Source: Phallusia mammillata
Taxonomy: Eukaryota
Direction: 5' to 3'
DNA: 64,000 bases
NCBI GenBank assembly: GCA_965637545.1
Contig: OZ281498.1
Span: 23,808,001-23,872,000 of the forward strand
The position numbers were made by a program, and so were the translations under genes. The notes below the pieces were generated by a model, which saw only the letters and a list, made by a program, of their open reading frames with translations, was not told where the DNA came from and did no database searches. This document shows positions 1-20,138 of this stretch, piece by piece. Within the stretch, counting starts at the first letter, position 1. Each line of letters begins with the position of its first letter.

Positions 1-1585
1 GATCAAGTCTTTGCAATCGCTTCTGCATAGCAAAAAAAAGATAAAATGAAATGGACCACTGTATACTTGTGTATCCTAGGGCTTGTGGAATCTTAGTTTT
101 ATATTTAAACAGCAAATATGGAAAATAAAGCATCATTTTTAGGCTGAGTGATCTACATGAACCCTTTCAGGTCTGATCCCAGTATTGCACATTTGTTTAT
201 CTTATCTTCAAAAGAAATAGTTCGAGTGTAAGCTCTTCTGCAGAGTACAACTGTATCAATTTAAAAACCGTATCAATTGGTCACAAAACGGACATGAGTG
301 ATAACGATAGAACTTTTTTGTCACAAGTTGTATTGCGGATCACAGCAACTCTACAATACAAGTTCTTTACATATTTGTGCGTTTTAATCTTGCAAGGTTG
401 CCTGCGAACAAAAAATGTAATTTGCGAGTGTGCAGTAGGATAGCTTAAAAAGGGTTAGGAAAGGCATGCGTAGTGTTAACTGCAGAAACTAACTTACTAG
501 ACTAGAACGCAACTGTTCAACCAATAAAGTGTTCACAAACCAGAACCCCACACACAGTAGCTGCGGTATGCTTACTGCTGCTTATATTTACATATCATGA
601 TAATAACATCCTGGTAACGTGTTTTCGCAGCAGTTTGTATGTTTTTCCGGACATACTTGACAAGCTTTTAGTCGTTCCACGTAGAAAGAATTACTGGGAC
701 AAAATCCTGAAGAACCTCCTTTAGGACCCATGATGATTTGGGGAATGGCATTCTGAGAAAATATGTATGTTCACTTAACATCCTTCATGCCACAGTTTAT
801 TTGTTTTAGCAAGTTATTTTCGACATTAAGTACTTGATATTGGAAGAAACAACCGCAACAAAAAGCATAAATAGAAATTTATGCCAAATGACATCCTTGA
901 CAGTATAAGAAAGTTGACCTCTACAAGTTCATAGCATGTTTTGAAAAGTGTTGATAGAAATACTAAAGTTTATGTGCCACAACTAACCTCAAATTGGCAC
1001 TCTTCATTTTTCCAAACATCTTTGTCAGCCATGCTCTGGTTTAGAAAGAAAAACAGAATCATATTTCTACATTGACTTGAATGCTTTGCAAATGCTTTAT
1101 AAACTGCAAGGTTACACACATATGCTTGATGTACCGTAGCTAATCATTGCTCAGCAAAGTAAATCTGTTTAAGCTTGACTGTTTGGCAAACCTACTGAAA
1201 ATCTTATACAACAGCACACAGGTTACTACTTTGGGTGATGTATTTCCAGTCAAAAGATAGTTTTATAATGAACTGGGCTTTGTTTCCAAGCACAAAAAAC
1301 AGACATAAATAAAACAGTTACATGCCAAACATAACGTTCTAACATTGAATGCTTGTTGGTACCAGTCTGCAGCCTTGGTTTATTACAGATTTATGCTTAA
1401 AAACAGTAAGAGGATTAAATGTATGACATTATCCTGAGGAATCGCTTAAAAGAAAACGTCGGAACGTCGTTAAAAGTTGTTTTCCAAAATCGAGAAGATA
1501 AAACAAAACGTACCTGTACAAAAAGCACCAAAAAACACAAGAAAAGACCAAGAAAATCAACTCGAAAAAACATTGTTCGTTTCAT
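1..1585 (-). CDS. Cys-rich/mucin/TM receptor family member A0 (3'-partial, runs off the window); exons 1514-1585, 988-1035, 592-752, 1-22
   Basis: Hand-spliced in frame (phases 0,0,2): MKRTMFFRVDFLGLFLCFLVLFVQ|SMADKDVWKNEECQFE|NAIPQIIMGPKGGSSGFCPSNSFYVERLKACQVCPEKHTNCCENTLPGCYYHDI|SDCKDLI. Close paralog of the gene at 3823-6598. Confidence 0.8.
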
Positions 1586-3070
1586 TTGAAAACACGTTTC
1601 AGCTCTTTCGCAATAGAGAGCGACATGAAAAAAATGACGCAAAAGTTTGCTACATCCGGACCGGTGAAGCAAAGAGCATCGGCGAATATTAAAAATCAAA
1701 CCTCTGTGAAAGGTTAGGGATGTTAGGGTTGGGGTGAGGTTTTATAATAACAATAACATTTAAACTAACTTTAAAACTCAGTTCCTAACCTTAAATTTAG
1801 ATTAAAATCCTTTTCTAACTGGTTATTAAAACAACTGTGCTCTTTACGTCACTTATCGGTATTTACCAAACGTGAGTTATTACCTTAAGCTCTACTTCGT
1901 ACTGATAACGATTGAGGCTCTGGATCTTGCTCTGTGCTATTTCTATTTAAAACAAGATTACCTGAATCTAAATTCGCAACACACACATTTTCGGAAAGAA
2001 ACTAAAAAATTTAAACTATACAATATATGCAAGCGATTTCTTTTCTGGGCTAGCCCATTAGTGTTTGCACTGACCAACGGTCAAGGGCATGTTGAAATAA
2101 GCCAATAACCCACTGAAATATAACATAGAGTTTTATTGTCTATTAGCGATTTCCGGGGTGTAAAATCCACGACCCTGTGTGGTTTACGTAAAAATATTTA
2201 AAGCAGGTTAAATTGTCAGGCCAAAGTATTGTCACAAAAACACAACCTTTAATGATATGTGATAAATCTTTTGCCCCAAAGACGATGTTTTTTATTGCTC
2301 GAATGTTTCACAGTAACTTTTGTAATACCAAATCCAACGCTGTACTGTTTAATTAAGTTATGCAAACAGTGGTCGGTTCCTGTTGTATTTTATTATCTTA
2401 CTGCACTCATGAAATATAGGTTCTAGATAAAATTCTAGGACTATAATTAAAACTTTTACTAAAGGTTTCGAAAAAAATCTTTTAAAAATTTGCGAAAAAA
2501 ACGAATTTATATGTTGATCGAATAAACAACAGAATAAATATATTAGTGTAATACGTTACAAATTTGATCAATTAGGCGTAAATATAACAAAATAAATTCA
2601 GACAGATCTATTGACACGCAAAAAAAGAAATCTAAACAATACTGTCGGCAATGTAAGCAAATCATTTAGGGCAAAAATGTGTTTACATATCGGTTCTGTT
2701 TGTGTTAAAACCTATAAAGGGGAACTTTTTGCAAAGGGGATAGATCATCTGTTAAACAACCAGTTTTACACAAGTAGATGTGCAGTACTAAGCATTCATA
2801 AAACGTTAACAACCGTAAATAGTGTCCTAAATTTCATTTTCATAGATCATATATCTGTGTACGATGGCTTTCAAGTACGATATAGGTAAAGAACATCAGC
2901 AATAAACGATACTGTGTACCTCAAAAACACTTGATTTAGGAAATAGTAAAAACCAACTTGTACGCAGTGTTGTGCAATTCAGGTGCAAATTCCTTAAGAT
3001 TCGATAGCTCGAACAGGTGATAAGAAGTTGAAACACAGTATACTAGAGCACCAGCACATTTGTCAAACAC
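340..3070. repeat. Segmental duplication unit (A0 5' half plus upstream block), paralogous to about 5360-7690; its part 2230-3070 recurs at about 11095-11930
   Basis: Long, directly visible alignments of introns and intergenic DNA. The copy at about 7390 lacks roughly 180 bp (2611-2790 equivalent). Confidence 0.85.
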
Positions 3071-3822
3071 TTACCACAAAATGCATTATTATCTACACAC
3101 TAGTGCAACATCCAGTAACCTTAAAACGATTTTGTGTACGTGGATTGCAACTACACAACACACAACACTGTGCAATGGAAAAAACCACTTGATCTCCTGG
3201 CGGTAAGGGGTAAAGCAGTGTAGATGCAATAAAATAGTGTATACGAGGCATGTTACACACACAACTTTGTTCATCAACAACAAGTGAACCGTGCTTCGAT
3301 TAGGTAGTACAGCACAGAAGTAGTACAATTTGGAATTTGGAACAACACAGTCGCAATGTAAAGTGTCCTGAACTGGAATTTAAAAAACGGAAATTGTTTG
3401 AAATACACTAAAGCGGCTGATTCTCAACGCGTCTCCCAAAGGCGTGGGCAACAATAAAAACAAACAAACAAATGGACAATTGCAAAAGCCTTATATGCCT
3501 TTATCCGTACCACATAAGCAATTTGGTCAATTACAATATTCTGACTACTTGTAACATAAAATCTTAAGTAACTCACTGGTGTCAGTGTCTCAACTTAACC
3601 GAGATTTTTTTCAATCTATGAGGGCGTTTTAAAATCCGCAAGCTGTTTAAAGAAAAGTACAGCAAAGTTTAAGACACTACAAGTTAAATGTTTGATTTTT
3701 CAACATACATGATGAGATGGTAAAGCAAAATTAGTTTACTGCCAACAAAAGGGGGGATACTAGCCTTATAATTCGAAGTCAGTGTGCACTGTCCAGTCAG
3801 TGTGCACTGTCCATACTATAAC

Positions 3823-6598
3823 TTACATATAGTTTTGATAATTTGGAACCTCTATGTAAATTGGATTAACCACAGGATTTTGCTTTTTTTGCCAGGTTTT
3901 GCAACAGCGTTTTCTAATCCAGTAGTAAACCATAGCAACTAAAACCACAAGGACAGTGCCAGAAATGCAAATTATTAACACTAGTTTTCGAGTTTCATTT
4001 CCTCCACTCGAATCCGCATGTGAGGTTTTCGGTTTTGCTGTAGTTGTATTTGGAGCAACAGGTGATGTGCTTGTGTTCGGCTGCTGTAGCAATGAGATTT
4101 TAGTTATTTGGTGGAAGACGTTACTTGGCAATAAGAAATAAGTGATTTTAAAAAACGTATGAGTTCTCAAACGACCCTACAATTTTTTATTGCAACCTTA
4201 TTCAAGTACGATGTGATAACCTCAACGAGCCAACAATTTCGTATAACAGTGGTTTGTGGCTTCTGATTTGAATAGGAATCAGACAGCAGATTTGTCCGTG
4301 TAGAATCGTTTTTAAGATTACTGGGCATGAAAATAGCAATGGGAACGTATCCAAAAGTTATTGAATAAAAAATCGCAAATCAAAAAACGTTTTCCAGGGG
4401 TTGCCGACACCTGTACTACTTCTACGTTTGTTAGAATTCGTTTTTACTTGTCACGAAATCAAAGTTCAAAAATCAATTATAACCTGAGGTCATGGCTAGT
4501 ATCTAAACGTGCAGACTTCGTAGCATGAGCTAAACTGTTACTGAAAGATTTGTGATTTCAATTGTCCAAGTACAAACAGCATTAAAACGATATTTGTGTT
4601 TTTGTTTTAACTAAACTTACAGTCGATGATGTCGTCTGCGTTTCACTTGTTGTAGAACTGACAGTGGTATCTACTGTTGGGGTTGGGGTTGGTGTTGTCG
4701 AGTCTGTGATCGAAGGTGTAACGGTCGTGCTTGGTGTACCGTAGGAAGTGGTTGTGGTAAAGACAGAAGACGCGATCAGGTGTTTGCAGTGACTTCTGTA
4801 CAGCAAAAAATAAAATAAAATAGGCGACTGTATACTTCCAGAAGGCGTGTGGCATCTTAGATTTACATTTAAACAGCAAATATAAAAATTAAAGCGTTGT
4901 TATAAGCTGTCATAGTACGCCAGGCCCATTGAAGGCGTTACAGTAAATCAATAGGCCTAGCGTACGATGGCATAGTAATCAGCTTTCATAGGTCATTCCA
5001 GTATTGAATGTTTGTTGATCTTATGTTTGAATAGAGATAGATTGAGTGCGTGTCGTCTTTTCTGTGGAGTACGACCGTATCAAATCAGTGTTCTGGGAAT
5101 TGGTGACAAAAAATGATTTGAGTGAGTTCCAGTGTTTTTTTAAAGGTGTTTTGGAGGACCGAAACGGTCCCCAAAATTTCTCCAGCGGTTTCCCAAAATT
5201 TGGACTTGCAACTACATGGCTATTTTTTGGTATTTAAATGAAACACTTGCGGTCTCTTAAAACTACTTAGCGGTCACCCAAACCAAACCTTAAAAAAACG
5301 TGTATAGTGACAACATTCGAAGCTCAATTTGATCTTGATTTTTATCCCAAGCAGTAGAACGCATCACAACAACACTACACAATATTTCGTGCGTTTTAAT
5401 CATGCAAGGTTTGCCTGCGAACAATCATATAACTAGGTAGTGTGCTGTAACTTAAAAAGGTTAGGAAAGGCATGCATAGTGTCAACCGTCGATAACTACC
5501 AAACTAGAACGCGACTGTTCAACCAATAAAGTGTTCACTAACCAGAACCCACACAGTAGCTTGGGTCACTGACTGCTGCATATACTTACATATCATGACG
5601 GTGGCATCTTGGCAGCGTGTTTTCGCAGCAGTTCGTATGTTTTCTCGGACATACTTGACAAGCTTTTAGTCGTTCCACGTAGAAAGAATTACTGGGACAA
5701 AATCCTGAAAAACCTCCCTCAGGGCCCATGATGATTTTGGGTAAGGCATTCTGAGAAAATATGTTTGGTCACTAAACATTCTGGATGCAACAGAGTATTT
5801 GTTTTTTAAGGTTATTTTCAACATTAGGTACCTTATGTTGGAAGCAACAACCGCAACAAAAATGCATAAAATTTATGTTACATGCAGCCTTAACACTTTT
5901 TGAAAGATGCTTTTTACAAGTTCATAGCATGCTTTAAAGAGTTCTCATGGAAAAATAGTTTATGTACCACAACTTACTTTAAATCTGCATTCTCCCTTTT
6001 TCCAAACATCATTGTCCGCTACAACCTTGTTAAGGAAGAAAAAAAAAAAAAACAGAATCATAATATTACTTTAACTTGGCTTAATAAGTTTCATGAATTG
6101 TCAGGCTACACAACTGTGCTTGATACAGGCATAGGTAATCATTGGTCAGCAAAGTAAAATTATTTAAGCTTGAATGTTTGGCAAACCTACTGTAAATCTT
6201 GTACAACAGCACACAGGTAACTATTTTTAGGCTGATGTGTTTCCAAACAAAATATGGTTTTATAATTATATAAGCTTAGTTGCAAAAATAAGAAAAAAAC
6301 ACAGAACAAATTAAAGTTATAGATTCCAGACACAACATAATAACATTGAACGATTGTTGGTACCAGTATGCAGCTCTACGAGAGGTTTATTACGAGTTTA
6401 TGCTTAACAACATCAAGAGGGTACAAAGTATGTAATTGTCCCGAGGACACGTTTCAACTAAGACGTCGAAACGTCGTTTAAAAATGTTTTTCAAAATCAA
6501 GACAATAAAACTAAACGTACCTGTCCAAGAAGCACCAAAAAACACAAGAAAAAACCCAGAAAATCGGCTTGAAAAATCATTTTGAATTTTTTAATCAT
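3823..6598 (-). CDS. Receptor family member A (complete); exons 6521-6598, 5978-6025, 5590-5750, 4621-4795, 3823-4083
   Basis: All GT-AG and in frame: signal MIKKFKMIFQADFLGFFLCFLVLLGQ; VVADNDVWKKGECRFK; Cys exon ...FCPSNSFYVERLKACQVCPRKHTNCCENTLPRCHRHDI; S/T-rich stalk; TM LVLIICISGTVLVVLVAMVYYW; tail RKRCCKTWQKKQNPVVNPIYIEVPNYQNYM. Confidence 0.85.
5130..5303. repeat. Dispersed ~170-bp repeat, with an inverted copy at about 29565-29740
   Basis: Reverse-complement match, e.g. ttagcggtcacccaaaccaaacctt vs aaggtttggtttgggtgaccgctaa. Confidence 0.8.
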
Positions 6599-7009
6599 TT
6601 TAGAACCTGTTTCTTTAAAGCGTGATGCAACCACATGACATGGTAAAAATGAAAAAATGACACTATGAGGCGCTATACCCAACATTGTTGTGAAAACAGA
6701 AACAATATTACTTTAATCTAAATTTGCAACACATTTTTGCGAAGAAGCTAAAAAATTTTCAACCAAAAAATATATGCAAGCGTTTTTTTTTCTGGGTTAG
6801 CTCATTAGGGTTTACAGTGATCAACGGTCGACGGCATGTTTAAGTAGGCCAGACCCGTAGAGTACTGAAATACAAAAGAGTTTCATTGTTTATTATAATA
6901 AGCGACTTTTTTTCGCTTTAGCGACTTTTTTCCGGTGCGTAAAATCCACTACCCCGTGTAGTTTACTTAAAAGATTGAAATCAGGCAAAATTTCCAGGCC
7001 AAAGTATTG

Positions 7010-8260
7010 TCACAAAAACACAACCTTTAATGATATGTGATAAATCTTTTGCCCCAAAGACGACGCTTTTTATTGCTCGAATGTTTCACAGTAATTTTTG
7101 TGATACCAAATCCAACGTCGTACTGTTTAATTAAGTAATGGAAACAGTGGTTGGAAACCTGCATGTTGTATTTTATTATCTTACTGCACTCATAAATATC
7201 GGTTCTAAATAAAATTCTGGGATCGTGATTAAAACTTTTACTAGGTTTCACAACAAATCTTTAAAAAAAATTGCGAAAAAAACGAATTTATATGTTGATC
7301 GAATAAACAACAGAATAAATATTTTAGTGTAATACGTTACAAATTTGATCAATTAGACGTAAATATCACAAAATAAATTCAGAAAGATCTAGCATTCATA
7401 AAACGTTAACAACCGTAAATAGTGTCCTAAATTTCATTCTCATTGATTATATATCTGTGTACGTTGTTTTTCAAGTACAATATAGGTAAAGAAAGTCAGC
7501 AACAAACTAAACTGTGTATACATTAAAAACACTTGATTTACGAGATAGTAAAAACCAACGTGTACGCAGTGTTGTGCAATTCAAATTCTGCAAATTCCTT
7601 AAGATTCGATAGCTCGAACTAGTGATAAGAAGTTGAAACACAGTATATTAGCACCAGTACAATTGTCAAAAACACTTACCAAAAAATGAAAACAGCTCGA
7701 AGGCAGAATGAAACATGTTTGCTGGAAAAAATGTTAGCAAACACAGCTTTACACTTTTTAAACAAAGTTTAGAATGACTTTTAATCGTACTAACTTTTAT
7801 AACGACATTCCTAACTATATTTGAACGACCAATTAGCTTTTTGTTTAGAAAAATAAAACGTTTTTGTTACAGCACAAGACACATTACTTAACAATTTGCT
7901 CAAAGACGAAATTTGCTCCAACGTGAAAAAGTGTCAAAACAATTTAGGAATAAGTGCTTTTCCGCGTTGAACAGGTCACGATACCCTAACTTGTCTAGTG
8001 AAGTCGGTATTGCAAAAGACAGTTCGTCATAAACTTTTACAAGACCAGACAAACACTTTAAAACGCAAAAAAAGGAATTATTGGTGGCGTCGATGGATTT
8101 TAAACACTCCGAGATGGTGCTGGATAGTTTTTAGCGTTGACAACACATGTGTACTTGCAAGTTTTAAAACAATTTGGTAATGCAACTGCTCAACCATATC
8201 GCAAGTTGTTTGGCCTTTTGGGGTGTACAGCACATTACAATTAAAATTAGTAGAATTATT
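7010..8260. repeat. Duplicated block (B 3' flank plus last exon), paralogous to about 11095-12510
   Basis: Near-identical runs, e.g. gctcaaagacgaaatttgctccaacgtgaaaaa at about 7897 and 12147. Confidence 0.85.
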
Positions 8261-9968
8261 GCTATGCCTAAAGGAATTTTTAAATTTCCATCCATGATTT
8301 CGTGCAGCATTGGCGGTGGTGAAACCATTACAGGTCGGGTTTCGTTAGATGTTGAGTCATTACTGGGATTTTCTGTCTTTCGCACATTCTGCAACAAAGC
8401 AAGTATTTGCCCCATTGATCAAACAGACAAAAATATGTAGCATAAGGTATGCCTGTTTTAGCTGTACAAAATTTTGTGATAAAGAGCTTCAAAAGTTAAA
8501 ATCACATTAATTACCATGTACTAATAACAATCACTGCAATTTTGTTGGTGTTTGACAAAAGACTTACAACTGTAGACGTCGTCGGCGTTTCACTTGTTTT
8601 AGTATTGATGGTTGGATCTACAATAGGGGTTTCAACTTTTGGTTGTTGTGCTGTAGATTCCGTGGTTGTTGTGCTTTTTGTGGGTTTTACTTCAGGTTCG
8701 GTTGTCGATATGTCACCATCCGTTGGTGGTGGATATTTTTCCGCACATAAGCTTTTACTACAAAGCAAATGTTTGTTGCGAATTTTGGTCAAGAACAAAA
8801 GTACTTATGAAGAAACATTTAGCCGTTAATTTTGGGCTAATTCATGTTTCATACCAGTTTCTGTTTTACGCCTACAAGCAGTTTTAAACTTTTTTTTTAG
8901 TAAGTAGTAAAAAGTAACTTAGTAAATCAATTGATTTAGCGTTAAGAGTGTATTCTGATCGGACTGCAAGTAGGTAGAAAAATATCGGTGAAAAAGCAGT
9001 TATGTAGTCATCATGTCCGCGAATGTTTTGACGTTTACCGAACGTAAGAACGTCAATACGTCAGGAACAGAATACAAGTATACAGGAATAGAATACGGAA
9101 ACCCTGCTAAATTGGCTCGGAGCTGCGTTTAGTTGTAATTAGACAACATATTATTGATAAAACATATGGGTAATGAACAACAGCTACCTACTTGGCTATG
9201 AAGCATGTAAGCAATCCATTTCTGCAGCAATTGGAATGTATGTTGGGACATGATTTGCAATCAGGATCGACATACATTTCATGTGGGGCACATAAATCGG
9301 TAGTGGTATATATTGCTCCGTTTTTGTCTATTCTTTTTATTGTTGTAATATCCTAAAAAATGAGCATTCTTACTCCTGATATGTATGTTTTGTAAAAGCG
9401 ACCAGATTTTATCTTGTGTGGTGTCAAGATTTACAATTTTATTTTTCCAAAATAAACAAAATACTTTAATAGCCCAAGCAAAAACTTTAATGACAAAAAT
9501 ACAACTTTTAGAAAAACAATTTGTTTCCTAATTAGCCTAAACATTGACAAATTGGAAAAAATGCAAGTAGATAGGTAAAAATTTTGTCTAAGTCACTGTA
9601 AGCATGAATGGTCCAGTTTTTGTCAAATATATAGATGTGAATACTAAACTTACTTGAAATGTACACGTTCCATTTTCCCACTTTACTGCATTCGCCTATA
9701 AACAGTTATCAAATAAGCAATTAAAGACAAGTTTCACAGACACTTATAAGCTTGCACAAACTTTTCAAAAAGAAATTGTACCATTGTGGCAAAAAATGCC
9801 TTTACCATTTTCCACTTTTTATTAGTAGTCTAAAGATATAGGGCTTATAACTTGTGAGAAAAAAATTACACCAAGAACACTCGTAAAAAAATTACTTACC
9901 TTATCCACAGGTTCAGCCATCAACCCCAAAGTAATAACTAATATCCAGAATATTATGAGCCTTTTCAT
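8164..9968 (-). CDS. Receptor family member B (complete, short tail); exons 9900-9968, 9654-9695, 9192-9352, 8568-8757, 8164-8388
   Basis: MKRLIIFWILVITLGLMAEPVDK|ANAVKWENGTCTFQ|DITTIKRIDKNGAIYTTTDLCAPHEMYVDPDCKSCPNIHSNCCRNGLLTCFIAN|KSLCAEKYPPP, then T-rich stalk|...TM IPLGIAIILLILIVMCC, then TPQKAKQLAIWLSSCITKLF*. Exon lengths are consistent with phases 0,0,2,0. Confidence 0.85.
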
Positions 9969-10695
9969 ATTTGATCTATAATTAGCTCGCTATTGTTTTT
10001 AAATTAGCCTGTATGTTCGTTTGCTAACTCTTATTAACTGTGTTGTTCGACGTTTTAATTTTTTGCAGCTTCAAGTTAGGTACCTGGCAGTACGTTTTGT
10101 CTGTAGACTGTAGCTTAGCTGATGTAATACCCAGAAAGTTCTCCATGCCCGGGGAAACCACCGGACGGGACAGTAGCGGGGTATGCGTTACGGGTTACAG
10201 CACTGTGCCGGTATTTCTATCAACGTACCAAGATAGGCGTTCGGAAAAAAGCTTTGGTTTGTGGGAACTTTATGCAGCGTTCTAAAATTGTTTTTTGCAT
10301 GGTTTTAAAAACGTTAAGAATTTTGACATGCCTTCACTACTCCGATAGTATCTTGTATGCGTAAAATAATCTCCTACAACACTACAAAAGCAATGTTTAA
10401 TTACCAAGAGGGTTGCTTACAGGCATAGGCTAATAGAAAGAAAATATGGCTTGTCTGCAAAACTACTTAGTGATCCGACGTTTCAACGTAAGGTCATCTG
10501 GCGATTTATGTGTCATTTTGCCGTGACGTCCGCTTTATTATGGCGTCAAAGGCATACCTACATAGAGTATGAAATACAAAAATAATGAAACCGCATCAAG
10601 TTTGTACAATTTCTACCGAGTATTTTCGTTTAATTCAATTGCTTCAAACTACTCGTCATTAGGTGATGTAATATCGATTTTTGAAAATATTAGGT
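8780..10695. repeat. B 5' half and promoter duplicated at about 17830-19905 (D)
   Basis: Exons 1-3, introns and upstream region align (e.g. gggaaaccaccggacgggacagta; actactcgtcattaggtgat). Homology ends at about 10695/19905. Confidence 0.85.
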
Positions 10696-11095
10696 ACCGT
10701 ACTTACTTTATTGAGAGCCACGGCTTATATTGTTTTTTAGCTGCCGTTTGTGCGGCTTATAAACGAGGGCGGCTTACAATCGAGGGCGGCTTTCATTTTA
10801 ATATTATACCGAAATCATTGCTACACTCCAACGTTATAAATTATTTGGGCTTCAAAACATGTATGCATGTACAGATTATACGTCGATATACGTTCCGTTG
10901 GGTACAGTTATCAACATAACCAACAGATATAAGCAAATAGCCATGCTATGTAACAACAGAAAGATGTATTAAGAAACAATAGTATCAAATATTCAAGCGT
11001 GCGGCTTACAATCGAGGGCGGCTTACATTATTTTGTTAACACCTCAACATGCGGCTTACAATCGAGGGCTTACAAAATACCTTCTTTAGTTATTG
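10695..11095. mobile_element. Truncated pogo/Tigger-like non-autonomous element
   Basis: Starts with TACCGTA and contains repeated gcggcttacaatcgaggg motifs (about 10770, 11001, 11051), as seen in pogo/Tigger-type MITE subtermini. No second TIR was found. Confidence 0.45.
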
Positions 11096-12312
11096 ACATG
11101 TGATAAATCTTTTGCCCAGAAACGATGTTTTTTATCGGTCCAATGTTTCACAGTAATGTTTGTGATACCAAATCCAACGTTGTTCAATTGTTTAATTATG
11201 TGATGCGAATAGTCGTTGGAATCATCTCGTATTTTATTACCTTGCTGCACTCACGAAACATCATTTCTAAATGAAATTCTGGGATCATAATTAAAACTTT
11301 TAATAAAACTTTCAAAACAAATCTTCGACAAAAAAGTTTGCGAAAAAGAAGTGTAGATCAAATAAAGAACAAAATAAATATTTTACTGTAATACGTTACA
11401 AATTTGATCAATCAGACGTAAATATAACAAAATAAATTCAGACAGATCTATTGACACGCAAAAAAGAAAACAATACTGTCGGCAATGTAAGCAAATCATT
11501 TAGGGCAAAAATGTGTTTACATATCGGTTCTATTTGTGTTAAAACCTATAAAGGGGAACTTTTTGCAAAGGGGATAGATCATCGGTTAAACAACCAGTTT
11601 TACACAAGTAGATGTGCAGTACTAAGCATTCATAAAACGTTAACAACCGTAAATAGTGTCCTAAATTTCATTTTCATTGATCATATATCTGTGTACGTTG
11701 TTTTTCAAGTACGATATAGGTAAAGAACATCAGCAATAAACGATACTGTGTACCTTAAAAACACTTGATTTACGAGATAGTAAAAACTAACGTGTACGTA
11801 GTGTTGTGCAATTCAGGTATGTCACGGCAATTCGAGTGCAAATTCCTTAAGATTCGATAGCTCGAACAGAAGTTAAAACACAGTATATCAGACTACTAGA
11901 GCACCAGTACAATTGTCAAAAACACATGAAAACAGCTCGCAGGCAGAATGAAACATGTTTGCTCATGTTTGTAAGTGTTAGCAAACACAGCTTTACACTT
12001 TTTAAACTTTACACACTTTAAGAGTTTTAAACTACTTGTAATCGTACTGACTTATATGGTTTTCCTGACATAATTTGAACGATCAATCAGCCTTTTTTAG
12101 AAAAAAAACGTATTAATTATAGCACAAGACATTTTTCTTAATGATTTGCTCAAAGACGAAATTTGCTCCAACGTGAAAAAGTTTTAAAACAATTTAGGGA
12201 TAACTGAAGTGCTTTTCCACGTTAAACAGGTCACAATACCCTAACTTGTCTAGTGAATTCGGTATTGCAGAAGACAGTTCGCCATAAACTTTTACAAGCC
12301 ACAGCAAACACT

Positions 12313-12560
12313 TTAAAAAGGTAAAACAGGAATTATTAAGGCATCGATGGATTTTAAATTCTCTGATACGGTACTGGATATATTTGAGCGTTGACAACAC
12401 ATGCGTACTTGCACTTTTTGAAACAATTTGGTAATGCAACTGCTCAACCATATCGCAAGTTGTTTGGCCTTTTGTGGTGTACAGTACATTACAATCAAAA
12501 TTAGTAGGACAATTATTACCATGTTGAATAGAATTTTTAACGTCCATCTATAGCGTCGAC
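12313..12560 (-). pseudogene. Orphan, frameshifted B-type TM/tail exon immediately downstream of member C
   Basis: Aligns with the B last exon (IILLILIVMCCTPQKAKQLAIWLSSCITKLF vs IIVLLILIVMYCTPQKAKQLAIWLSSCITKLFQKVQ...). It has a 1-nt deletion just before the TM and no recognisable B-type stalk start. Confidence 0.7.
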
Positions 12561-12705
12561 GGTGGTATTTATATGCGCTACTACTAGCAAAACCAGTAAT
12601 GATTTATAATCTGCGTTCGTAATTAAAAAAAAAAAAAACTTTAAAAATCGCCTTTTTTCGTATTTTGCACAAAACGAGACTGAATGTTAAAGGTTAAACT
12701 ATAGT

Positions 12706-15078
12706 TTATTGGTTAACCTCTCTGTAAGTTCTGTTGGACCCAGTATTTTGCCGTTTTTTAATCCACTGCCTGCAGAAGTAAACCACAATAGCTGAAACCA
12801 CAAGCACAGCAGTGCCAGGAATGCAAATTATTAACACTAGTTTTCCAGTTTCAATTCCTCCACTCGAATCCGCATGTGAGGTTTTCGGTTTTGCTGTAGT
12901 TGTATTTGGAGCAACAGGTGATGTGCTTCTATTCGGCTGATGCTGCACAAATTAGATTTCAATGACTTTTCTCGAAAAGCTTTTTCGGTGCCTATGTCGA
13001 AGATGTATGGGTTTTTCCCCACATTTTTTAATTTTACGGATATCGGTAAACACTGGTAGTTACTTCATTTGATAAATGGTTTAGTGCTGCATAATAAGAA
13101 ATTTTTAGGGTGGTTCGACGTTTCAGTTTGGGAATTACCCTAACAACGTTTGTGTGACAGCACAGAAATATTTCTTTTTGCATACAACCTGTTTGGAAAT
13201 TGAAGTAGGTTCAACATTTGAAGTCTGAACCTGCCTTTCAGTAGTTGCTGTCATCGGAGTGGTGGTTGTCATACGTGGCGATGGTTTTGTAACCGGTGTT
13301 GATGTGGTGGTTGAAAACATACGGAACAAGTTTTTGCAATCTGCTTGACTAAGAACAACAGTTTTATCAATCAACTGTCATACATTTACTTTGAATTAAA
13401 TTAAAGAAAATTAAAAAAAATTAATTTGCAACCTCTAGAATTTGTGCCTCGGTGCCGTGGTGATGATTTAATATTCATAAAACCTTAGCCAACACCAACT
13501 AACCTGTATTTTTGTTAATATTAAAATCAGCTGGACAAACCACTATTGCACATAAAAAAAGGTTGATTTTCCAACCCCTGCTGGAAAGGAATGCATAGAT
13601 GCGAAAATCACTTTAACACATCAAACTATGCAACTGCATTTTAACACATCTTTTTTGGACAATAATGCATGACTGTTTGATATCAGTGAAGCATTTAACT
13701 TCAATAATACAAAAAACATTCAAAGTCTCTTAGACATGATATATTTACATGGCGTTGCGAGAAATTTCTAATGCACAAATCAGTGGCCACCGACCACCAA
13801 CAAATCCACCTAAAGTGTTAGACGTTACTTGGACTCGCTGGTAAAATAACTTTATTGATTTGTGGAATGGCTGGGATATAGAGCAAAGTGGTTGAACAAC
13901 ATAGTCTATCGGGCAATACAAATAACTTGTGGTAATTTTGGAACGGAGAGAATGTAATGTGCTCCTTGTACGAAATGTTTATGTTAGTATTTGTTGGTCA
14001 CTGTTGGAGTAATTTCACCAGCTTGTGTAAAACCTGTGTCTGGGCAAATACTTAATCTATCTAAGTGCGCTGAGGACCACTGTGAGCAACATCAGATGTG
14101 AAAGCTATAACCAGCCACAAGTTAATATATACGGCATAAAGTCTTATGTACGCTATAAAAAGTTGAGAGAAGTGCGAAGGCGCTTTAAACCCTTTGCGAA
14201 ACCTCACTAACACAGATACCAAATACATTTGCTTACCTGCAAAAACATCTTAGAAGTGTGTTATTGCAACAGTTCGTGTGAGGCAATGGGCACGTATGAC
14301 ATGTATTGGATGTGAAAAATTGGTCTGGGTTGCAGTAACCATGAACATACGATCCGTCGTCTTGTCTAATTAACTTCCCTTTTCCCTTTTGTAACAAACC
14401 TCGTTTACTTTTAAGCGTTTTTGGCTGTTTCTACAGTAGGCATTTGTTCTTATTAGCCAAGATAAAAGTGATATTATTATAAAAGTTAAAAAATAATTAG
14501 CGGTATAATGAAGTTTTTTATAAACATTTTTTCACTACCGGAATGAACACAAATTGGAATTACCACGAACTGGCATGTTCCGTTATTCCGTGTAATCCGA
14601 CGTTCCTGTTTCGACTGCCAATAAAAAAAAAACATTCCTCTATAATATATAATATAATTGTCTACTAATCTTTCCATACTTCATGAACAAAATCAACACA
14701 GTTACACCATGTTAACTTACAGAAACATTGCAATTTGTATACTTCCTTTTCACACGTTTTAGCTTCTGCAAAACAAACTAAATATGAATCTGTTTATAGT
14801 TTGAACTTTAAAGAATAGATTGTAAAAAAAAAACAATTGATATGTAAATAAATGTATTCTAAATTAGTTATTTATTGTAATAACGATTTTGCATGCTTGT
14901 GTTTTATTCCGAATTTAAAATTACCTTAAAGATAAGTTTAAAATAAAGAAAATTGTAAACTCAAACACTAATGATCATGATAACTTACCTTATATGTTTT
15001 ACCGCTCCCCACTACCACCATCATCAACAAGAACAGTAGCATCATATTCACAACGCAGGAGAACATAAACCGTTTCAT
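12706..15078 (-). CDS. Receptor family member C (complete); exons 14989-15078, 14721-14765, 14237-14430, 13186-13348, 12706-12942
   Basis: MKRFMFSCVVNMMLLFLLMMVVVGAVKHIR|KLKRVKRKYTNCNVS|KQPKTLKSKRGLLQKGKGKLIRQDDGSYVHGYCNPDQFFTSNTCHTCPLPHTNCCNNTLLRCFCS|QADCKNLF, then T-rich stalk|...TM LVLIICIPGTAVLVVSAIVVYF, then CRQWIKKRQNTGSNRTYREVNQ*. Confidence 0.82.
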
Positions 15079-15559
15079 ACTTTGCTGCTAAGGCACTGGA
15101 TTAAAACGTTATATAACTCTGCAACGATTTGCCATTATTTGAACTTTTGTTAATTTGATTGTGTTTGATAGGAATTGCTACAATTTAAACAGTTTGTCCC
15201 AGGGGTGGAAAGTTCCTTGGAATGCAAGGTTTTTTCTCATACAGTTTGTTAAAAAAAAATTATTTTATTATTACACTTATTTTTAATCAAATGTTGTGAT
15301 TTTGTAGTCCCAAAACGCAACCTACAAATACGCACCTGACTGCTTTTTGATTACTTATTACATGACCTGGGACAAAACACTATAACTTCTACTATTGCTT
15401 TTAAATAAATGATTTGCTGTCTGTGTTTTTGATTTTGTACCAGTCGACTCATCCACACATTTGCCAACTGTTTTAAGTTTTGATAAATGTGTGTCACAAG
15501 TTGTGATCCACTACATGGTTGGCCGACTAGCTTGCCTATCTTAAATATTTTGCAATTCT

Positions 15560-16563
15560 AAACCACATCTCTCGATACAACTTATAAACCGGCAAAATTC
15601 GAAACAATTACATCTTAACACAACGTTAAATTCCTTGCTATTCCTACAGCAGTACGGTTACCAGTGCATTACATCAGGGACTTGTACATGAGTATCACAT
15701 GGACCTATCACTGTCCGTTTTATGTTTCGCGTCACAGCACAAAGGCGATGTGACACGAACAATGAAATTTTCCTAAGGATTCCAAATAATCAGACGCGAC
15801 CCCCTCAATCAGACGCGATTTCCAAATAATCAGACGCGTTACAAGGTGACATCATCCACATTTATATAGGATTCAACGACACAACAAATGGTTGGTTTCT
15901 AAACCACATAAGCCCACATAAATGGTGTAGGGTTTTATAAGCAACAGTAAAAAAACTTGCAAAAAAGTCAGGACATGGATATTACTGGTGGTCAGTAATC
16001 CCAGGTGGGGATAAATAATATGATGAAAACAAAAACGTTATCATGGCAAAGCAATCATTTTTATGAATATTGTAGGCGTATATGGGTTTAACCTAAATCT
16101 TATAGTTAGTAGTTACATGTGCTTTAAAGATACAAACTGCCCTTAAAGTTGGCTAACCTGAAGAAAGACATAAAACATACACTGGACTTTTTTTGACATG
16201 TCTTTGAGTCAAAAACAAACCGCTTGACGGTTTCCAGTGATCAGCTTTGTCGGTCAACAACACCTATAATTAACCAGCCCACGTGGTCCGAAAGGCATTT
16301 GTACAAATGTGCCACTTTGGTATGTTTACACTTGCCATTTTTCCAAACTCGACTTGATATCAACCAGACAAAGCCTTCTGCTTTCAAACAACGTGATGAA
16401 CTTATTGCGTATTTATTGCGGCGTGATGAACCCAGAAGAAACGCCTGACTGATCGTTGTGGTAAAAGTTGTCTACGTGTCGTCTAAGATAATGACCTACT
16501 TGTTGTTACTACTCTTAAGGCTTGTAGCATAGAGATGACACGAACACAGCAAAGACGCTTTAT
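15560..16563 (-). pseudogene. Probable decayed family member between C and D (relics of exons 1-3)
   Basis: Three relics in the correct order: an exon-1-like segment 16500-16563 (ATA-AAG-CGT-CTT vs family ATG-AAA-AGG-CTY, donor GTAGGT); an exon-2-like VWKNGKCKHT at about 16315-16350; and an exon-3-like segment after a TTAG acceptor at about 15772 containing YCCRNSKEFNVVLRCNC, with stops and frameshifts. Confidence 0.5.
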
Positions 16564-16889
16564 GTAACTGTGTTATTTACTTTTATTAGACATTAACCAG
16601 ATACATTTATCAAAACGTATGATGGTGATGCGTTTTGTAATGGTTTTTGTATATGATTCTTATTCGATCGGAAAAAAGCCTGTGTGCAGAAGAATATTAA
16701 CAACCTTTCTATTAACAACCTTCACAACGACATTTTTAGCTTCGGTTAATCATGGGTTGAATTTAACACCTAAAATGTGAAAGCCAGTATGAAGAGTTTA
16801 CTTTTTTGAACTAAAACCACATCCAATGTGAAAAGACTTGTTTCGAGGTGATTTAACACAAAAACTAAAGGCAGTTCATATGTTTTTCG

Positions 16890-19165
16890 CTAAACTGAGT
16901 CAGTAGTGTAAATTGACTCATCATCAGGTGCAGTTCTGTCGTTGTCGAGCATTTCCACGATTTCCTGTGGGTCTGATGATTGTAGTGAATCTTCGGTATT
17001 GTTCTCATTAGCTTGTAGCCTTGCCTTTAATCCCTCCATACACTTATACCGTTTGTTTCGACACAAGCATGCCAGCAAGAACAGACATATAGCGACGATT
17101 ACAACGAGGATGACAATAAGGATGACCTCGTCGTTTGGCCAAGTGGTTGTAACTGGGTTCACAATGGGACCAAGTGTTGTTTCCACCTGTACAGACTGTG
17201 ATATAAATTTAGGTGCATTTAAGTTTGTTGGCCTTAAGAGTGCTTAAAATCACTGACACGTAACTTTTTTGAAATAAGTTCGGGGTTAAGTAGGATAAAA
17301 TTATTTTTCTACATCTTAAGAATGTTTAAATCTCTATTACATAATTTTTTGTACACTTATTTTTCTTATTTCATGATTTTGAACGAGTATTGAATACTTT
17401 GCAAAGAACCTTAATGTTAAAAAAACACACAACTAAATATCAGTGTATTCAGTACAAAAAAATTAGCAATCTTCTTTTAGCTGCCCGAGTGCATGTTCTA
17501 TATTTACTAGTGGTTTTGCAAAAGCTGAACCCCATTTAATACTGAATATTTCGGTTTTCTGATAAAAGGTTTTATTAGGGTTTGACACGAGACTTACAGG
17601 CGAAGAAGGCGATGGCGCTTTCGTTGTTGTCGTTGAACTTGTGGTTGTATCCACTTTTGGGGTTTCGACCGTTGGGGCTGTCACTGGTGTTGTGGACGCT
17701 TCGGTTGTTGTGCTTGGTGTGGGTTTTATGTCAGGTTCGGGTGTTGGTGAGACCCCAGTGGGTGGCGGATACTCCGTAGCGCAAGAGCTTCTACAAAAAA
17801 GTGCTTAAATATTGGTTAATAACAACGGTGTTTATTGGTAAGGACTAGAGCCGCCCGTAAAGGCTTGCAGTTCATGCGTTTTACAACATTTTCTGTTTTA
17901 TGCCTACAAGCAGGAGTATTAGCACTTTATTGTTAACTGAAAGTCATTAAGCTGAAATATTCATTATCATTAACAACATATTCGTCGACCGCGAGTGTTA
18001 GATTAGACCGGGAGTACCAAAAAGACTGTTAAAAAAGTTGAGAACCTCTAGGTTAAAGGCTTTCGGCATTCTTCTCGCGCTATGCCTGGTTGCTCATGCA
18101 AAACATCGACATCTAGCTTTTCGTGTGTATTTCGTTTTAGCTTTAGCTTCACTATTTCATTGATCATCTGGTCTAGGTCGAACCAAATAAAAAAAATCCA
18201 ACCGGTTTAGCGAATGTGGGTTTAACATATTCCGGTTTTGTCGACATTTATTGTCCAAAAATCTAAAAACATTAAATCCTGAGCATGAATGCAAGGTAAC
18301 CTACAAATTTGGCTTTAATACGGCAACATTATTAAAATAGAATCGAATAAACTCAAAAGCTACCAACTTGTAGAAGTAACATTTATCCAATCCATTTCTA
18401 CAGCAATTGGAAAGCCCTTTGGTACATGGTGTGCATCCAGGATCAGTGTACAACTCATCTGGGCCACATAAATTAGTTGTGCTTTTTATTCCGTTTTCGT
18501 CTTTTCTTTTTATAGTTGTAATTTCCTGAAAAAAAACGCATTCTTGCATGTAAAAACAACCATCAGATTTTATCTTGTGGTATTCATGATTTACACTTTT
18601 ATCTTTTACAAAACATACAAAATAATTGAATAGCCCAAGCAAACAGGTTAACCATGACAAAAATAATACAATTGTTAGAAAAACAGTTTTGTTTCTTAAT
18701 TAGCTTCACAAATTGTTGCATTTTTTTGAAAGGAAATATGTAATTATTCATGTAAAACATTTGTCTAATGTCTCTGTTAGCATGAATGAATCAGTTTTTG
18801 TTAAAAAAATAGAACTTATGAATGCAAAACTTACCACAAATGTACAAGTTCCATTTTCCCACTTTTCTTTATGCTCCTAACGAAACAAAATAACGAATTA
18901 TTTAAAAACAAATTAAACAGACAATTATAAGCATACACAAACGTTTTACAACAAATTGTAAGTTACCATAATGGTAAAAACTGCTTTCAATATTTTTCCT
19001 ATATTATTGGTATAACTTATATTTCGAGAAAAATAAAAAAATTAGAAACAAAAATTATGTTTTTCATGAACAGCCTTAACAAAGATAATTTACCTTATCT
19101 TCTGGTTTAGCCATCATCCCGACATTAATAAGTAATATCCAGAATACCATAATAAGCCTTTTCAT
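16890..19165 (-). CDS. Receptor family member D (complete); exons 19094-19165, 18835-18876, 18368-18525, 17598-17790, 16890-17186
   Basis: MKRLIMVFWILLINVGMMAKPEDK|EHKEKWENGTCTFV|EITTIKRKDENGIKSTTNLCGPDELYTDPGCTPCTKGLSNCCRNGLDKCYFYK|SSCATEYPPP, then P/T-rich stalk|...TM VILIVILVVIVAICLFLLACLC; acidic tail ending PQEIVEMLDNDRTAPDDESIYTTDSV*. Confidence 0.87.
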
Positions 19166-20138
19166 ATTTGACTTCGAATTAGCTAACTTTGGTTTTCAAA
19201 TAATATATTCGATAACAAACTCTTTGAAACTATGCTGTTTGAAATTCCAACTCTACAAATTTCCTAAAGTTAGGTACAGGCAGTAGTGAAGTTTTGTCTT
19301 TGGCCATCAGCTGATGAACTGGTTTCTAGAAAGTTCGCCATTCAACCCCGGGAAACCACCGGACGGGACAGTACCGGGGTGACGTTACAGCCACATGTCG
19401 GTATTTTCATCAACTTACCAAGTAGGCGTTTCAAAAAAAATTGTTTAGGCAGCGTGTTAGTATTAGTTTTTTGCATGGTTTTAGAAACAGCGAAATATTT
19501 CGGCGAAGGCTACTCGTATGATCGTATCGTGTATGCGCGTAATAAGCTCGACACGTCAAAGCACTATTAAAAGTGTTGCTTCCGGGCATGGGCTACTATA
19601 ATAATATGGCTTGTCGGCAAAAGATAGGCCTATTTGTTTTTGGACGTTTTAACGTCAGTAGGTCGTCTGGCGATATATGTGTCATTTGCCGTGATATAGG
19701 TATAGATAACAATATGGCGTCCTAGGCAATTGTGCTGTTACGATTTGTATCACCGGAGAAATAAACTCAACTCAACATAGCATGAAATACAAAAACAATG
19801 AAACCGTATCAAGTTTGCGCCATTTTACCGAGTATTTTTCGTTTAATTCAATTACTCCAAACTACTCGTCATTAGGTGATTTAATATCGATTTTTGAAAA
19901 TCCTAGGTGTCAAATATTTTTGGAAGAATGTGTATATCACTCTCATCCGATATGTGCATTAATCTATTGGGCTCATCCGTTTTTCCCACATGTGTTTTCG
20001 CGCCTTCGTGGGGTTTAATTGTTATTATTATTCCTTTTGTTAATTTGTTTGTTTTTAGTTTTGTTGCGAGTTTATCTCTGTTTATATTATTGTTTGTTAA
20101 TAACTTCTTTCCAGCGCAAGAACAGCAGGTTATTGACG

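What the first reader, a model, noticed from the sequence alone, without database searches (positions are those of the whole stretch)
3960..17186. Ectodomains and TM/tail exons are shuffled independently between paralogs
Seen: B and D share exons 1-4, introns and promoter but have unrelated last exons. A and C have very different exons 1-3, yet their last exons are nearly identical over about 120 nt (3960-4083 vs about 12818-12940; I count about 5 mismatches) and diverge abruptly in mid-TM. Inference: unequal crossover or gene conversion pairs binding modules with different signalling tails, as in paired activating/inhibitory receptor clusters.
Basis: partly seen in the sequence, partly recalled or inferred. 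Interest (0 to 1): 0.72.

Follow-up and report, generated by a model that had tools for sequence, protein, structure and literature searches.

The report
Mosaic tail exons in sea-squirt receptor array
In a tandem array of small membrane-receptor genes of a sea squirt, the last (membrane-anchor and tail) exon has a different history from the binding-domain exons in at least two genes, the ordinary result of copying and unequal recombination between neighbouring gene copies, with no sign of an activating/inhibitory pairing.

Summary
A's and C's last exons match at 120 of 125 nt (synonymous divergence 0.03), although their Cys-domain exons are 48% identical and saturated at synonymous sites. B and D align at about 69% from 730 nt upstream of the ATG to about 35 nt into intron 4. 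Their last exons are unrelated.

New here:
- The array has nine tandem paralogs, plus one on another contig.
- A fifth gene, Z, sister of A, has its last exon about 1 kb left of the window.
- The mid-TM "break" is where C switches from A-like to 63 nt identical to Z. This three-way mosaic is non-random (0 of 5000 permutations).
- C's cytoplasmic tail is its most diverged part.
- A truncated B-type last exon lies just downstream of C's last exon.
- The non-coding spacers after A and C share a 300-nt tract at 98%, in the same register.

Best reading: non-allelic recombination. One terminal exon was replaced, at least two gene-conversion tracts followed, and B or D has a partial-gene chimera at its 3' end.

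The paired activating/inhibitory analogy fails: no ITIM, ITSM, ITAM or buried TM charge.

No read evidence could be obtained. The scan noted similar mosaic clusters elsewhere in this genome.

The parts
3823..6580 (-). Gene A. Exons: 6521-6580 (signal), 5978-6025, 5590-5750 (Cys domain), 4621-4795 (Thr/Pro stalk), 3823-4083 (T1-type last exon: juxtamembrane, TM, tail with NPIY/YIEV).
   Evidence: All exons have AG/GT borders and consistent phases. The gene is collinear with Z at 70-88%.
1..1573 (-). Gene Z, sister of A, cut by the window edge. Exons: 1514-1573, 988-1035, 592-752; the stalk exon starts at 22. Its T1-type last exon lies outside the window at G000:C5:23806748-23807014.
   Evidence: Genome search.
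8164..9968 (-). Gene B. Exons: 9900-9968, 9654-9695, 9192-9352, 8568-8757, 8164-8388 (T2-type last exon: TM plus a 20-aa tail).
   Evidence: In the whole genome the T2 type occurs only here and as the relic at 12421-12540.
12706..15078 (-). Gene C. Exons: 14989-15078, 14721-14765, 14564-14614, 14237-14430 (Cys domain), 13189-13348 (stalk, weak GTTGTA donor), 12706-12942 (T1-type last exon).
   Evidence: The Cys exon is nearest to paralog Y1 (63% nt; tree support 77/82) and not to A or Z.
16890..19165 (-). Gene D. Exons: 19094-19165, 18835-18876, 18368-18525 (GTTGGT donor), 17598-17790, 16890-17186 (T3-type last exon: TM plus a 59-aa acidic tail).
   Evidence: The T3 type is unique in the genome.
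12815..12939 (-). Tract 1 of C's last exon: A-like, 120/125 identical to A 3959-4083. Encodes the extracellular juxtamembrane stretch and the start of the TM.
   Evidence: A-C 96.0% with dS 0.031; Z-A 89.6% with dS 0.21.
12752..12814 (-). Tract 2 of C's last exon: 63/63 identical to Z. A differs at 82% plus 3-nt and 9-nt deletions. Encodes the second half of the TM and the first tail residues.
   Evidence: A run of 11 consecutive Z=C informative sites, 0 of 20000 permutations. Two-breakpoint maximum chi-square 38.4, 0 of 5000 permutations.
12706..12751 (-). Tract 3 of C's last exon: the cytoplasmic tail. It is the diverged part (56-67% to Z and A, 24-nt deletion, NPxY lost, YREV kept), while Z and A stay 82% alike.
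12421..12540 (-). Truncated relic of a B-type (T2) last exon, 166 nt downstream of C's stop codon. Homology to B starts abruptly at 12540 (= B 8283). The acceptor and the first 105 nt are missing, the stop codon has changed to CAA, and no phase-0 AG acceptor lies in its open frame.
11090..12540 (.). Duplicated block downstream of C (relic + flank F' + spacer element R3). It equals B's 3' half-exon + flank F + R2 (7027-8283) at 80-95%.
1950..3083 (.). Spacer element R1, between A and Z. The other copies are R2 (6700-7688) and R3 (11090-11923). R is specific to this cluster (only 3 copies in the genome) and has no Rfam match. R1 and R3 share a 300-nt tract at 98% (2634-2933 vs 11468-11767) inside 73-78% flanks, in nearly the same register (offset 8834) as the A/C exon tract (offset 8856).
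8535..10695 (-). B's 5' module (promoter, exons 1-4, first ~35 nt of intron 4), homologous to D 17570-19908 at 66-69%, with sharp ends on both sides.

Best explanation
This is a tandem array of a lineage-restricted family of small type-I membrane proteins in a sea squirt. Each protein has a signal peptide, one Cys-rich knob of about 55 aa built across three exons, a Thr/Pro stalk, a TM segment and a short tail.

In the five right-hand genes (Z, A, B, C, D) a phase-0 intron separates the stalk exon from the TM/tail exon, so the last exon can be exchanged without breaking the frame. Three kinds of non-allelic recombination have acted on it.

1. Terminal-exon replacement in C (inferred). A roughly 250-nt island carrying the Z/A-type last exon sits in otherwise non-homologous C sequence. 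Immediately downstream lies a truncated B-type last exon.

2. Later interlocus gene conversion (shown at sequence level). After the Z/A duplication, one tract of about 125 nt was exchanged between A and C, and one of about 63 nt between Z and C. This makes C's last exon a three-way mosaic. The non-coding spacers downstream of A and C were exchanged in the same register.

3. A chimeric 3' end in B or D (shown as a pattern; the mechanism is inferred). B's 2.2-kb 5' module is a copy of D's. It joins a different last exon about 35 nt into intron 4.

The outcome is different combinations of ectodomain and membrane or tail exons. Nothing shows that these combinations were selected or that they signal in opposite ways.
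For: Gene models with consistent phases.

Discordant divergence for A versus C: the Cys exon is 47.6% identical with 91% of synonymous sites differing, while last-exon tract 1 is 96.0% identical with dS 0.031. This is younger than the Z/A split (dS 0.21-0.26).

Z and C are 63/63 identical in tract 2.

The site patterns are clustered. The run test gave 0 of 20000 permutations. The two-breakpoint maximum chi-square test gave 0 of 5000.

dN is about equal to dS in tract 1 (4 non-synonymous changes, 1 synonymous), so constraint does not explain the identity.

The T1 exon has only 3 copies in the genome. In C it is an island: its intron and 3'UTR match nothing else.

The relic B-type exon has a sharp breakpoint and no usable acceptor.

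The R1/R3 non-coding tract is 98-99% identical, in register with the exon tract.

The B/D block has sharp ends. B5 and D5 are unrelated, and each type is unique in the genome apart from the relic.

The Cys-exon tree gives B+D 100/99 and C+Y1 77/82.
Against: The AU test on the 53-column Cys alignment does not reject a (C,Z,A) clade (p 0.116). The incongruence therefore rests on divergence levels and a shared 2-aa indel, not on a well-supported tree.

The direction of each exchange, and the order of the rearrangements around B and C, cannot be resolved without an outgroup.

For B and D, differential loss of two ancestral alternative last exons is not excluded.

C's stalk-exon donor is non-consensus (GTTGTA).
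Confidence: 0.75

Rival explanations
1. Common descent plus strong purifying selection. All genes inherited a T1-like last exon, and its 5' part is simply conserved in A, Z and C.
For: The shared stretch encodes the juxtamembrane/TM region, which could be constrained. The AU test does not reject a (C,Z,A) clade on the Cys exon.
Against: Synonymous sites are as homogenised as non-synonymous ones (A-C dS 0.031, dN 0.044), whereas synonymous sites in the Cys exon are saturated. C is closer to A and to Z in these tracts than Z is to A, its whole-gene sister. The six other paralogs have non-alignable last exons. The non-coding R1/R3 tract is 98% identical.
Confidence: 0.03
2. Assembly or polishing artefact. 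Short tracts were copied between paralogs by mis-mapped reads during consensus polishing, or contigs were mis-joined.
For: The tracts are short (63-125 nt) and lie between paralogs that are already similar. No reads could be examined.
Against: Across the array the paralogs are only 70-90% identical, with many indels, so a mis-join is unlikely. The window has no Ns. The relic, the B/D breakpoints and C's diverged tail with an in-frame 24-nt deletion are structural features that polishing does not produce. All reading frames stay open.
Confidence: 0.07
3. For B and D only: the ancestor had two alternative last exons (T2 and T3), and each daughter gene lost one. No exon was imported.
For: Homology ends inside intron 4, where a deletion could start. 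Two other genes of the array carry tandemly duplicated last exons: X, and Y1.
Against: No relic of T3 lies near B and none of T2 near D. The T2 block (exon half + flank + R) is 80-95% identical to its copy behind C, so it is younger than the B/D split at 66-69%. B's D-like module also has a sharp upstream end at 10695.
Confidence: 0.15
4. An adaptive paired-receptor system. Recombination is retained by selection because it couples one binding module to opposing signalling tails.
For: The tails differ in motif content: NPxY/YxxPhi in Z and A, YREV only in C, a 20-aa Tyr-free tail in B, and a long acidic tail in D. The genes form a tandem, fast-evolving surface-receptor family.
Against: No cytoplasmic ITIM, ITSM or ITAM and no buried charged TM residue. 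The B and D ectodomains are only 58% identical, so they are not a matched pair. Conversion also hits non-coding spacers, which points to general recombination activity. The tract that A and C share is not the tail.
Confidence: 0.1

Closest known systems
Interlocus gene conversion and unequal crossing-over in tandem immune-type receptor families: KIR (PMC2768862), CEACAM (PMC2832619, PMC5112662), Siglec-11/16 (PMC5701461)
   Same: Tandem paralogs. Short tracts of near-identity embedded in diverged genes. Hybrid genes whose 5' and 3' parts have different histories. Exon borders in compatible phase.
   Different: In those families conversion typically homogenises the ligand-binding ectodomain between partners with opposite ITIM or ITAM-adaptor tails (abstracts shown). 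Here the homogenised piece is the juxtamembrane/TM part of the last exon, the ectodomains are very different, and no ITIM, ITAM or charged-TM logic is present.
Mosaic or chimeric receptor clusters already noted by this scan elsewhere in the same genome (notes s1-375418, lectin receptors; s1-368972, RIG-I-like receptor chimera with a leftover exon)
   Same: Same genome. Tandem clusters. Front and back halves with different histories. A broken leftover exon marks a joint.
   Different: A different gene family and locus. Those notes are unchecked AI notes and were not re-tested here.
TNF-receptor-type cysteine-rich domain (BCMA/TACI-like single-CRD receptors)
   Same: A single small Cys-rich ectodomain on a type-I stalk. 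The top structural neighbours of a low-confidence model are TNFR-type CRDs: 4-1BB, DcR3, DR6, CD40, BCMA and class-C GPCR CRDs.
   Different: No Pfam hit. No PDB sequence-profile hit at E up to 10. All Foldseek E-values are at least 2, on a model with pLDDT 60.7. The Cys pattern C-x12/14-C-x2-C-x6-CC-x6-C has a CC doublet. Membership is not established.

Membership tests
Interlocus (ectopic) gene conversion tract | A tract of sharply elevated identity, bounded by much lower identity, between non-allelic copies | tested here: met
   A-C 96.0% over 125 nt and Z-C 100% over 63 nt. The adjacent segments are 82% and 56-67%, and the flanks do not align.
Interlocus (ectopic) gene conversion tract | Synonymous sites homogenised as much as non-synonymous sites (recency, not constraint) | tested here: met
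   Tract 1 A-C has dS 0.031 and dN 0.044. Z-A in the same tract has dS 0.21. In the Cys exon, A-C synonymous sites are saturated (pS 0.905).
Interlocus (ectopic) gene conversion tract | Non-random clustering of informative sites (GENECONV or maximum chi-square type test) | tested here: met
   A run of 11 Z=C sites, 0 of 20000 permutations. Two-breakpoint maximum chi-square 38.4, 0 of 5000 permutations.
Interlocus (ectopic) gene conversion tract | Mosaic confirmed in independent raw reads or haplotypes | not testable with these tools
Exon shuffling / chimeric gene by unequal or illegitimate recombination | Incongruent per-exon relationships | tested here: met
   Nearest paralog by exon. C's Cys exon is nearest Y1 (63% nt), while its last exon is nearest Z/A (93%/88%). 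B's exons 1-4 are nearest D, while its last exon matches only the relic behind C. Caveat: the AU test on 53 columns is not significant (p 0.116).
Exon shuffling / chimeric gene by unequal or illegitimate recombination | Compatible intron phases at the exchanged border | tested here: met
   The stalk exons of Z, A, B, C and D all end in phase 0, and all their last exons start in phase 0.
Exon shuffling / chimeric gene by unequal or illegitimate recombination | A physical footprint of the rearrangement | tested here: met
   A truncated T2 exon sits at 12421-12540 with a sharp junction. B/D homology ends sharply at 8535/17570 and at 10695/19908.
Paired activating/inhibitory receptor cluster | ITIM or ITSM in the cytoplasmic tail of one partner | tested here: not met
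   A regular-expression scan of all last-exon peptides found none in a cytoplasmic tail. The only [SIVL]xYxx[IVL] matches lie in or at the TM of paralog X.
Paired activating/inhibitory receptor cluster | A charged TM residue (adaptor coupling) or an ITAM in the other partner | tested here: not met
   No ITAM. No charged residue inside any TM window, apart from a Lys at the outer edge of B's.
Paired activating/inhibitory receptor cluster | Near-identical ectodomains on the two partners | tested here: not met
   The B/D Cys exon is 58% identical at amino-acid level and 75.6% at nucleotide level (dS 0.40). A and C are 37-41% identical at amino-acid level.
TNFR superfamily CRD (BCMA/TACI-like) | Significant sequence or profile match to TNFR CRD families or to solved TNFR chains | tested here: not met
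   Pfam: no family at E up to 10. PDB profile search: 0 hits at E up to 10.
TNFR superfamily CRD (BCMA/TACI-like) | TNFR-type CRD fold | tested here: inconclusive
   The AF2 model of the Cys exon alone has pLDDT 60.7. The Foldseek top hits are TNFR-type CRDs, but at E 2-8 and probability at most 0.3.

The most novel reading that the evidence does not exclude
The phase-0 intron before the TM/tail exon acts as a recurrent cassette-exchange point in a tunicate-specific surface-receptor family. Under this reading, selection keeps new ectodomain and tail combinations, and keeps a shared juxtamembrane/TM interface (for example for a common co-receptor). That would make it an invertebrate-chordate counterpart of vertebrate paired-receptor evolution, built on a non-Ig, possibly TNFR-like, scaffold.
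Probability: 0.1. Interest if true: 0.6.

Novelty: new member of a known kind. Interest (0 to 1): 0.33.

Why it matters
The locus is a clean, small example of how tandem receptor arrays produce new combinations of ectodomain and membrane anchor. A relic exon and datable conversion tracts are still visible. It occurs in a tunicate gene family that no database recognises.

The process itself is textbook: gene conversion and unequal recombination in tandem families. The scan has noted the same process at other clusters of this genome. Its value is therefore mainly for annotation. It shows that B and C are chimeras and that per-gene trees of this family will mislead. It may also serve as a marker of high ectopic-recombination activity in this genome.

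Tried and rejected
- Pfam scans of the Cys-domain and last exons gave no family for the Cys exon. The last exons gave only sub-threshold, compositional TM hits such as TMEM154.
- A profile of the 10 Cys exons found nothing among PDB sequences and nothing among 1.84 billion representative proteins. No cross-species comparison was therefore possible.
- The AF2 model of the Cys exon was too weak (pLDDT 60.7) for a reliable fold assignment.
- Rfam gave nothing in 1-20000, so the conserved spacer R is not a known RNA.
- R is not a genome-wide repeat. It has 3 copies, all in this cluster.
- I looked for another donor for A's divergent TM segment, and for homologs of C's last intron, C's 3'UTR, the B and D introns 4 and the D-C spacer. 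None was found.
- I asked whether the relic could serve as an alternative last exon of C. Its open frame has no phase-0 acceptor.
- I considered a class-I PDZ ligand at D's C-terminus (…DSV). It was rejected because position -2 is Asp, not Ser or Thr.
It was re-run from coordinates.
All searches were exon by exon, by reference.
- The word-index protein search was not used. Its length window excludes full-length relatives of single exons, and the exhaustive profile search was already blank.

Full report
**What is there**

The window (G000:C5:23808001-23872000) comes from a 240-Mb, AT-rich chordate genome. Earlier notes of the scan call it a sea squirt, probably Phallusia mammillata (unchecked).

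On the minus strand of 1-19165 lie five tandem genes of one family. All exon borders are AG/GT and the phases are consistent.

- A: 6521-6580, 5978-6025, 5590-5750, 4621-4795, 3823-4083.
- B: 9900-9968, 9654-9695, 9192-9352, 8568-8757, 8164-8388.
- C: 14989-15078, 14721-14765, 14564-14614, 14237-14430, 13189-13348, 12706-12942.
- D: 19094-19165, 18835-18876, 18368-18525, 17598-17790, 16890-17186.
- Z: 1514-1573, 988-1035, 592-752, and a stalk exon starting at 22 that runs off the window. Its last exon lies about 1 kb to the left, at window -1252..-986.

Each protein has a signal peptide, a Cys-rich knob spread over three exons, a Thr/Pro stalk, a TM segment and a short tail. In the Cys exon the invariant residues are C18, C31, C34, N40, C41, C42, N44 and C49.

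Four more paralogs (Y2, Y1, X, W) lie further left, and one (P6) lies on contig C6. The array therefore has nine tandem members plus one dispersed copy. P6 sits in a segmental duplicate of the left end of the array.

**Checking the observation**

A and C. The repeat finder and BLAST confirm the similarity of the last exons. Elsewhere A and C are homologous but very distant. The Cys exon is 47.6% identical at nucleotide level, with 91% of synonymous sites differing. No other nucleotide similarity is detectable.

B and D. They are collinear at 66-69% from about 730 nt upstream of the ATG, through exons 1-4 and introns 1-3, to about 35 nt into intron 4 (B 8535, D 17570). There the homology stops.

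Their last exons give no BLASTP match to each other. The B type occurs in the genome only in B and in one relic. The D type is unique.

**The A/C pattern is a three-way mosaic**

Adding Z changes the picture. Z and A are whole-gene sister duplicates: 70-88% identical through exons, introns and flanks, with dS 0.26 in the Cys exon.

C's last exon falls into three parts:

| Part of C's last exon | Window coordinates | Encodes | A-C | Z-C | Z-A |
|---|---|---|---|---|---|
| Tract 1 | 12815-12939 | juxtamembrane and TM start | 96.0% (dS 0.031) | 90.4% | 89.6% (dS 0.21) |
| Tract 2 | 12752-12814 | TM second half and first tail residues | 82%, plus 3-nt and 9-nt deletions in A | 63/63 identical | 82%, same deletions in A |
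| Tract 3 | 12706-12751 | cytoplasmic tail | 67% | 56% | 82% |

In tract 3, C also carries a 24-nt deletion and has lost the NPxY motif.

The "abrupt divergence in mid-TM" is therefore the switch from an A-like tract to a Z-identical tract.

The clustering of site patterns is non-random. A run of 11 consecutive Z=C sites was reached in 0 of 20000 permutations. The two-breakpoint maximum chi-square of 38.4 was reached in 0 of 5000 permutations.

In tract 1, four of the five A-C differences are non-synonymous. Constraint therefore does not explain the identity; recency does.

In these tracts C is closer to A, and to Z, than Z and A are to each other. At least two exchanges must therefore post-date the Z/A duplication.

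**C's T1 exon is an island**

Homology to Z and A starts about 17 nt upstream of the acceptor and ends at the stop codon. C's last intron and its 166-nt 3'UTR match nothing else in the cluster. The T1 exon has only three copies in the genome.

Directly after the 3'UTR, at 12540, homology to the 3' half of B's last exon begins abruptly and continues through B's 3' flank and the spacer element R. This is 11625-12540 aligned with 7391-8283, at 80-95%.

This relic lacks the acceptor and the first 105 nt. Its stop codon has mutated to CAA, and its open frame contains no phase-0 acceptor. It is a dead remnant that marks a rearrangement joint.

The simplest reading (an inference) is that a T1-bearing piece replaced the 5' part of a T2-type last exon at the C locus. 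Equivalently, a T2 block was pasted behind C6. Later conversions then used the roughly 250 nt of T1 homology.

**Recombination is not confined to exons**

The 1-kb spacer element R occurs only three times in the genome: 1950-3083, 6700-7688 and 11090-11923. It has no Rfam match.

R1, behind A, and R3, behind C, share 300 nt at 98% (2634-2933 vs 11468-11767) inside flanks of 73-78%. The offset of this tract is 8834. The offset of the A/C exon tract is 8856. About 750 nt of non-homologous sequence of similar length lies between the two tracts.

This indicates that the A and C units pair out of register and exchange sequence, coding or not.

**B and D**

B's 5' module (8535-10695) is a copy of D's, with sharp ends on both sides. 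It sits between two copies of the T2-F-R block: the relic block upstream and the intact one downstream.

The T2 block copies are 80-95% alike. They are therefore younger than the B/D split at 66-69% (dS 0.40 in the Cys exon).

I read B as a chimera: a D-like 5' module joined to a T2 last exon. I cannot order the events. Differential loss of two ancestral alternative last exons is not excluded (rival 3).

**How general is the shuffling?**

By Cys exon the family falls into these groups: Z+A; X; Y2+W+P6; C+Y1 (support 77/82); and B+D (support 100/99).

By last exon the groups are: T1 (Z, A, C); T2 (B, plus the relic); T3 (D); T4 (Y2, W, P6); T5 (Y1, in two copies); and T6 (X, in two copies).

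Z/A and Y2/W/P6 are concordant. C and the B/D pair are not.

The AU test on only 53 columns does not reject a (C,Z,A) clade (p 0.116). The incongruence therefore rests on three things:
- the contrast between saturated synonymous sites in the Cys exon and dS 0.03 in the last exon;
- a 2-aa indel that C shares with Y1, B and D;
- the island structure of T1 in C.

All exchangeable borders are phase 0.

**Function**

No tail carries a cytoplasmic ITIM, ITSM or ITAM, and no TM carries a buried charge.

- Z and A have NPxY plus YxxPhi, which are endocytic or PTB-type motifs by established knowledge.
- C keeps only YREV.
- B has a 20-aa tail without Tyr.
- D has a 59-aa acidic tail.

What A and C share is the juxtamembrane/TM part, not the tail. 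The analogy with paired activating/inhibitory receptors is therefore not supported. In the known cases conversion homogenises ectodomains (for example Siglec-11/16, PMC5701461; CEACAM, PMC2832619; abstracts), which is the reverse of what is seen here.

**Family identity**

The Cys exon has no Pfam hit, no PDB profile hit and no hit among 1.84 billion representative proteins. A low-confidence AF2 model (pLDDT 60.7) has TNFR-type CRDs as its nearest neighbours, but none is significant (E at least 2). "TNFR-like" stays a lead.

**Limits**

Neither the assembly nor the splice junctions could be checked against reads.

Every search was exon by exon, by reference.

No outgroup species was reachable, so the direction and order of the events are inferences.

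**Verdict**

The process is ordinary for tandem receptor arrays and has been noted by the scan at other clusters of this genome (s1-375418, s1-368972). The signalling analogy is unsupported.

Noticed in passing
L002/L003: window -12303..-10729 and -9200..-7645 (G000:C5 about 23795700-23800360): A 1.6-kb segment holding paralog Y1's stalk/TM/tail exon and its 3' flank is duplicated at 92%. The two copies flank a 506-aa open frame that looks like a LINE-type endonuclease/reverse transcriptase (window -9314..-10831, same strand). This could be retroelement-associated duplication of a terminal exon.
   Followed up: partly
L002: window -15727..-15514 vs -15030..-14789: Paralog X has a local tandem duplication (76-80%) of its stalk/TM exon. 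This may be a spare or an alternative terminal exon.
   Followed up: no
L004 (G000:C6:5539001-5549000): A segmental duplicate of the left end of the array lies on another contig. It carries an X-type terminal exon (2657-2887), a W-like gene P6 (Cys exon 5282-5439, terminal exon 6316-6606) and W's downstream flank at 85%.
   Followed up: partly
window 1950-3083, 6700-7688, 11090-11923: The roughly 1-kb intergenic element R is conserved at 82-99% between spacers, which is better than the introns of the flanking sister genes. It occurs nowhere else in the genome and has no Rfam match. It may be a shared regulatory region or simply a conversion hotspot.
   Followed up: partly
window 5216-5298 vs 29569-29651: An 83-nt inverted match at 99%, between intron 3 of gene A and a site 24 kb away. 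It is probably a small mobile element.
   Followed up: no
window 10730-11080 and 15781-15840: Short tandem motifs lie in the spacers upstream of B (GCGGCTTACAATCGAGGGC-like, several copies) and upstream of C (AATCAGACGCG, three copies). Function unknown.
   Followed up: no
window 592-752, 5590-5750, 9192-9352, 14237-14430, 18368-18525: The Cys-knob domain has no Pfam, PDB or large-library relative. Its weak structural neighbours are all TNFR-type CRDs. Paralogs Y1, Y2, W and X encode stalk and TM in one exon, whereas Z, A, B, C and D have a phase-0 intron between them.
   Followed up: partly
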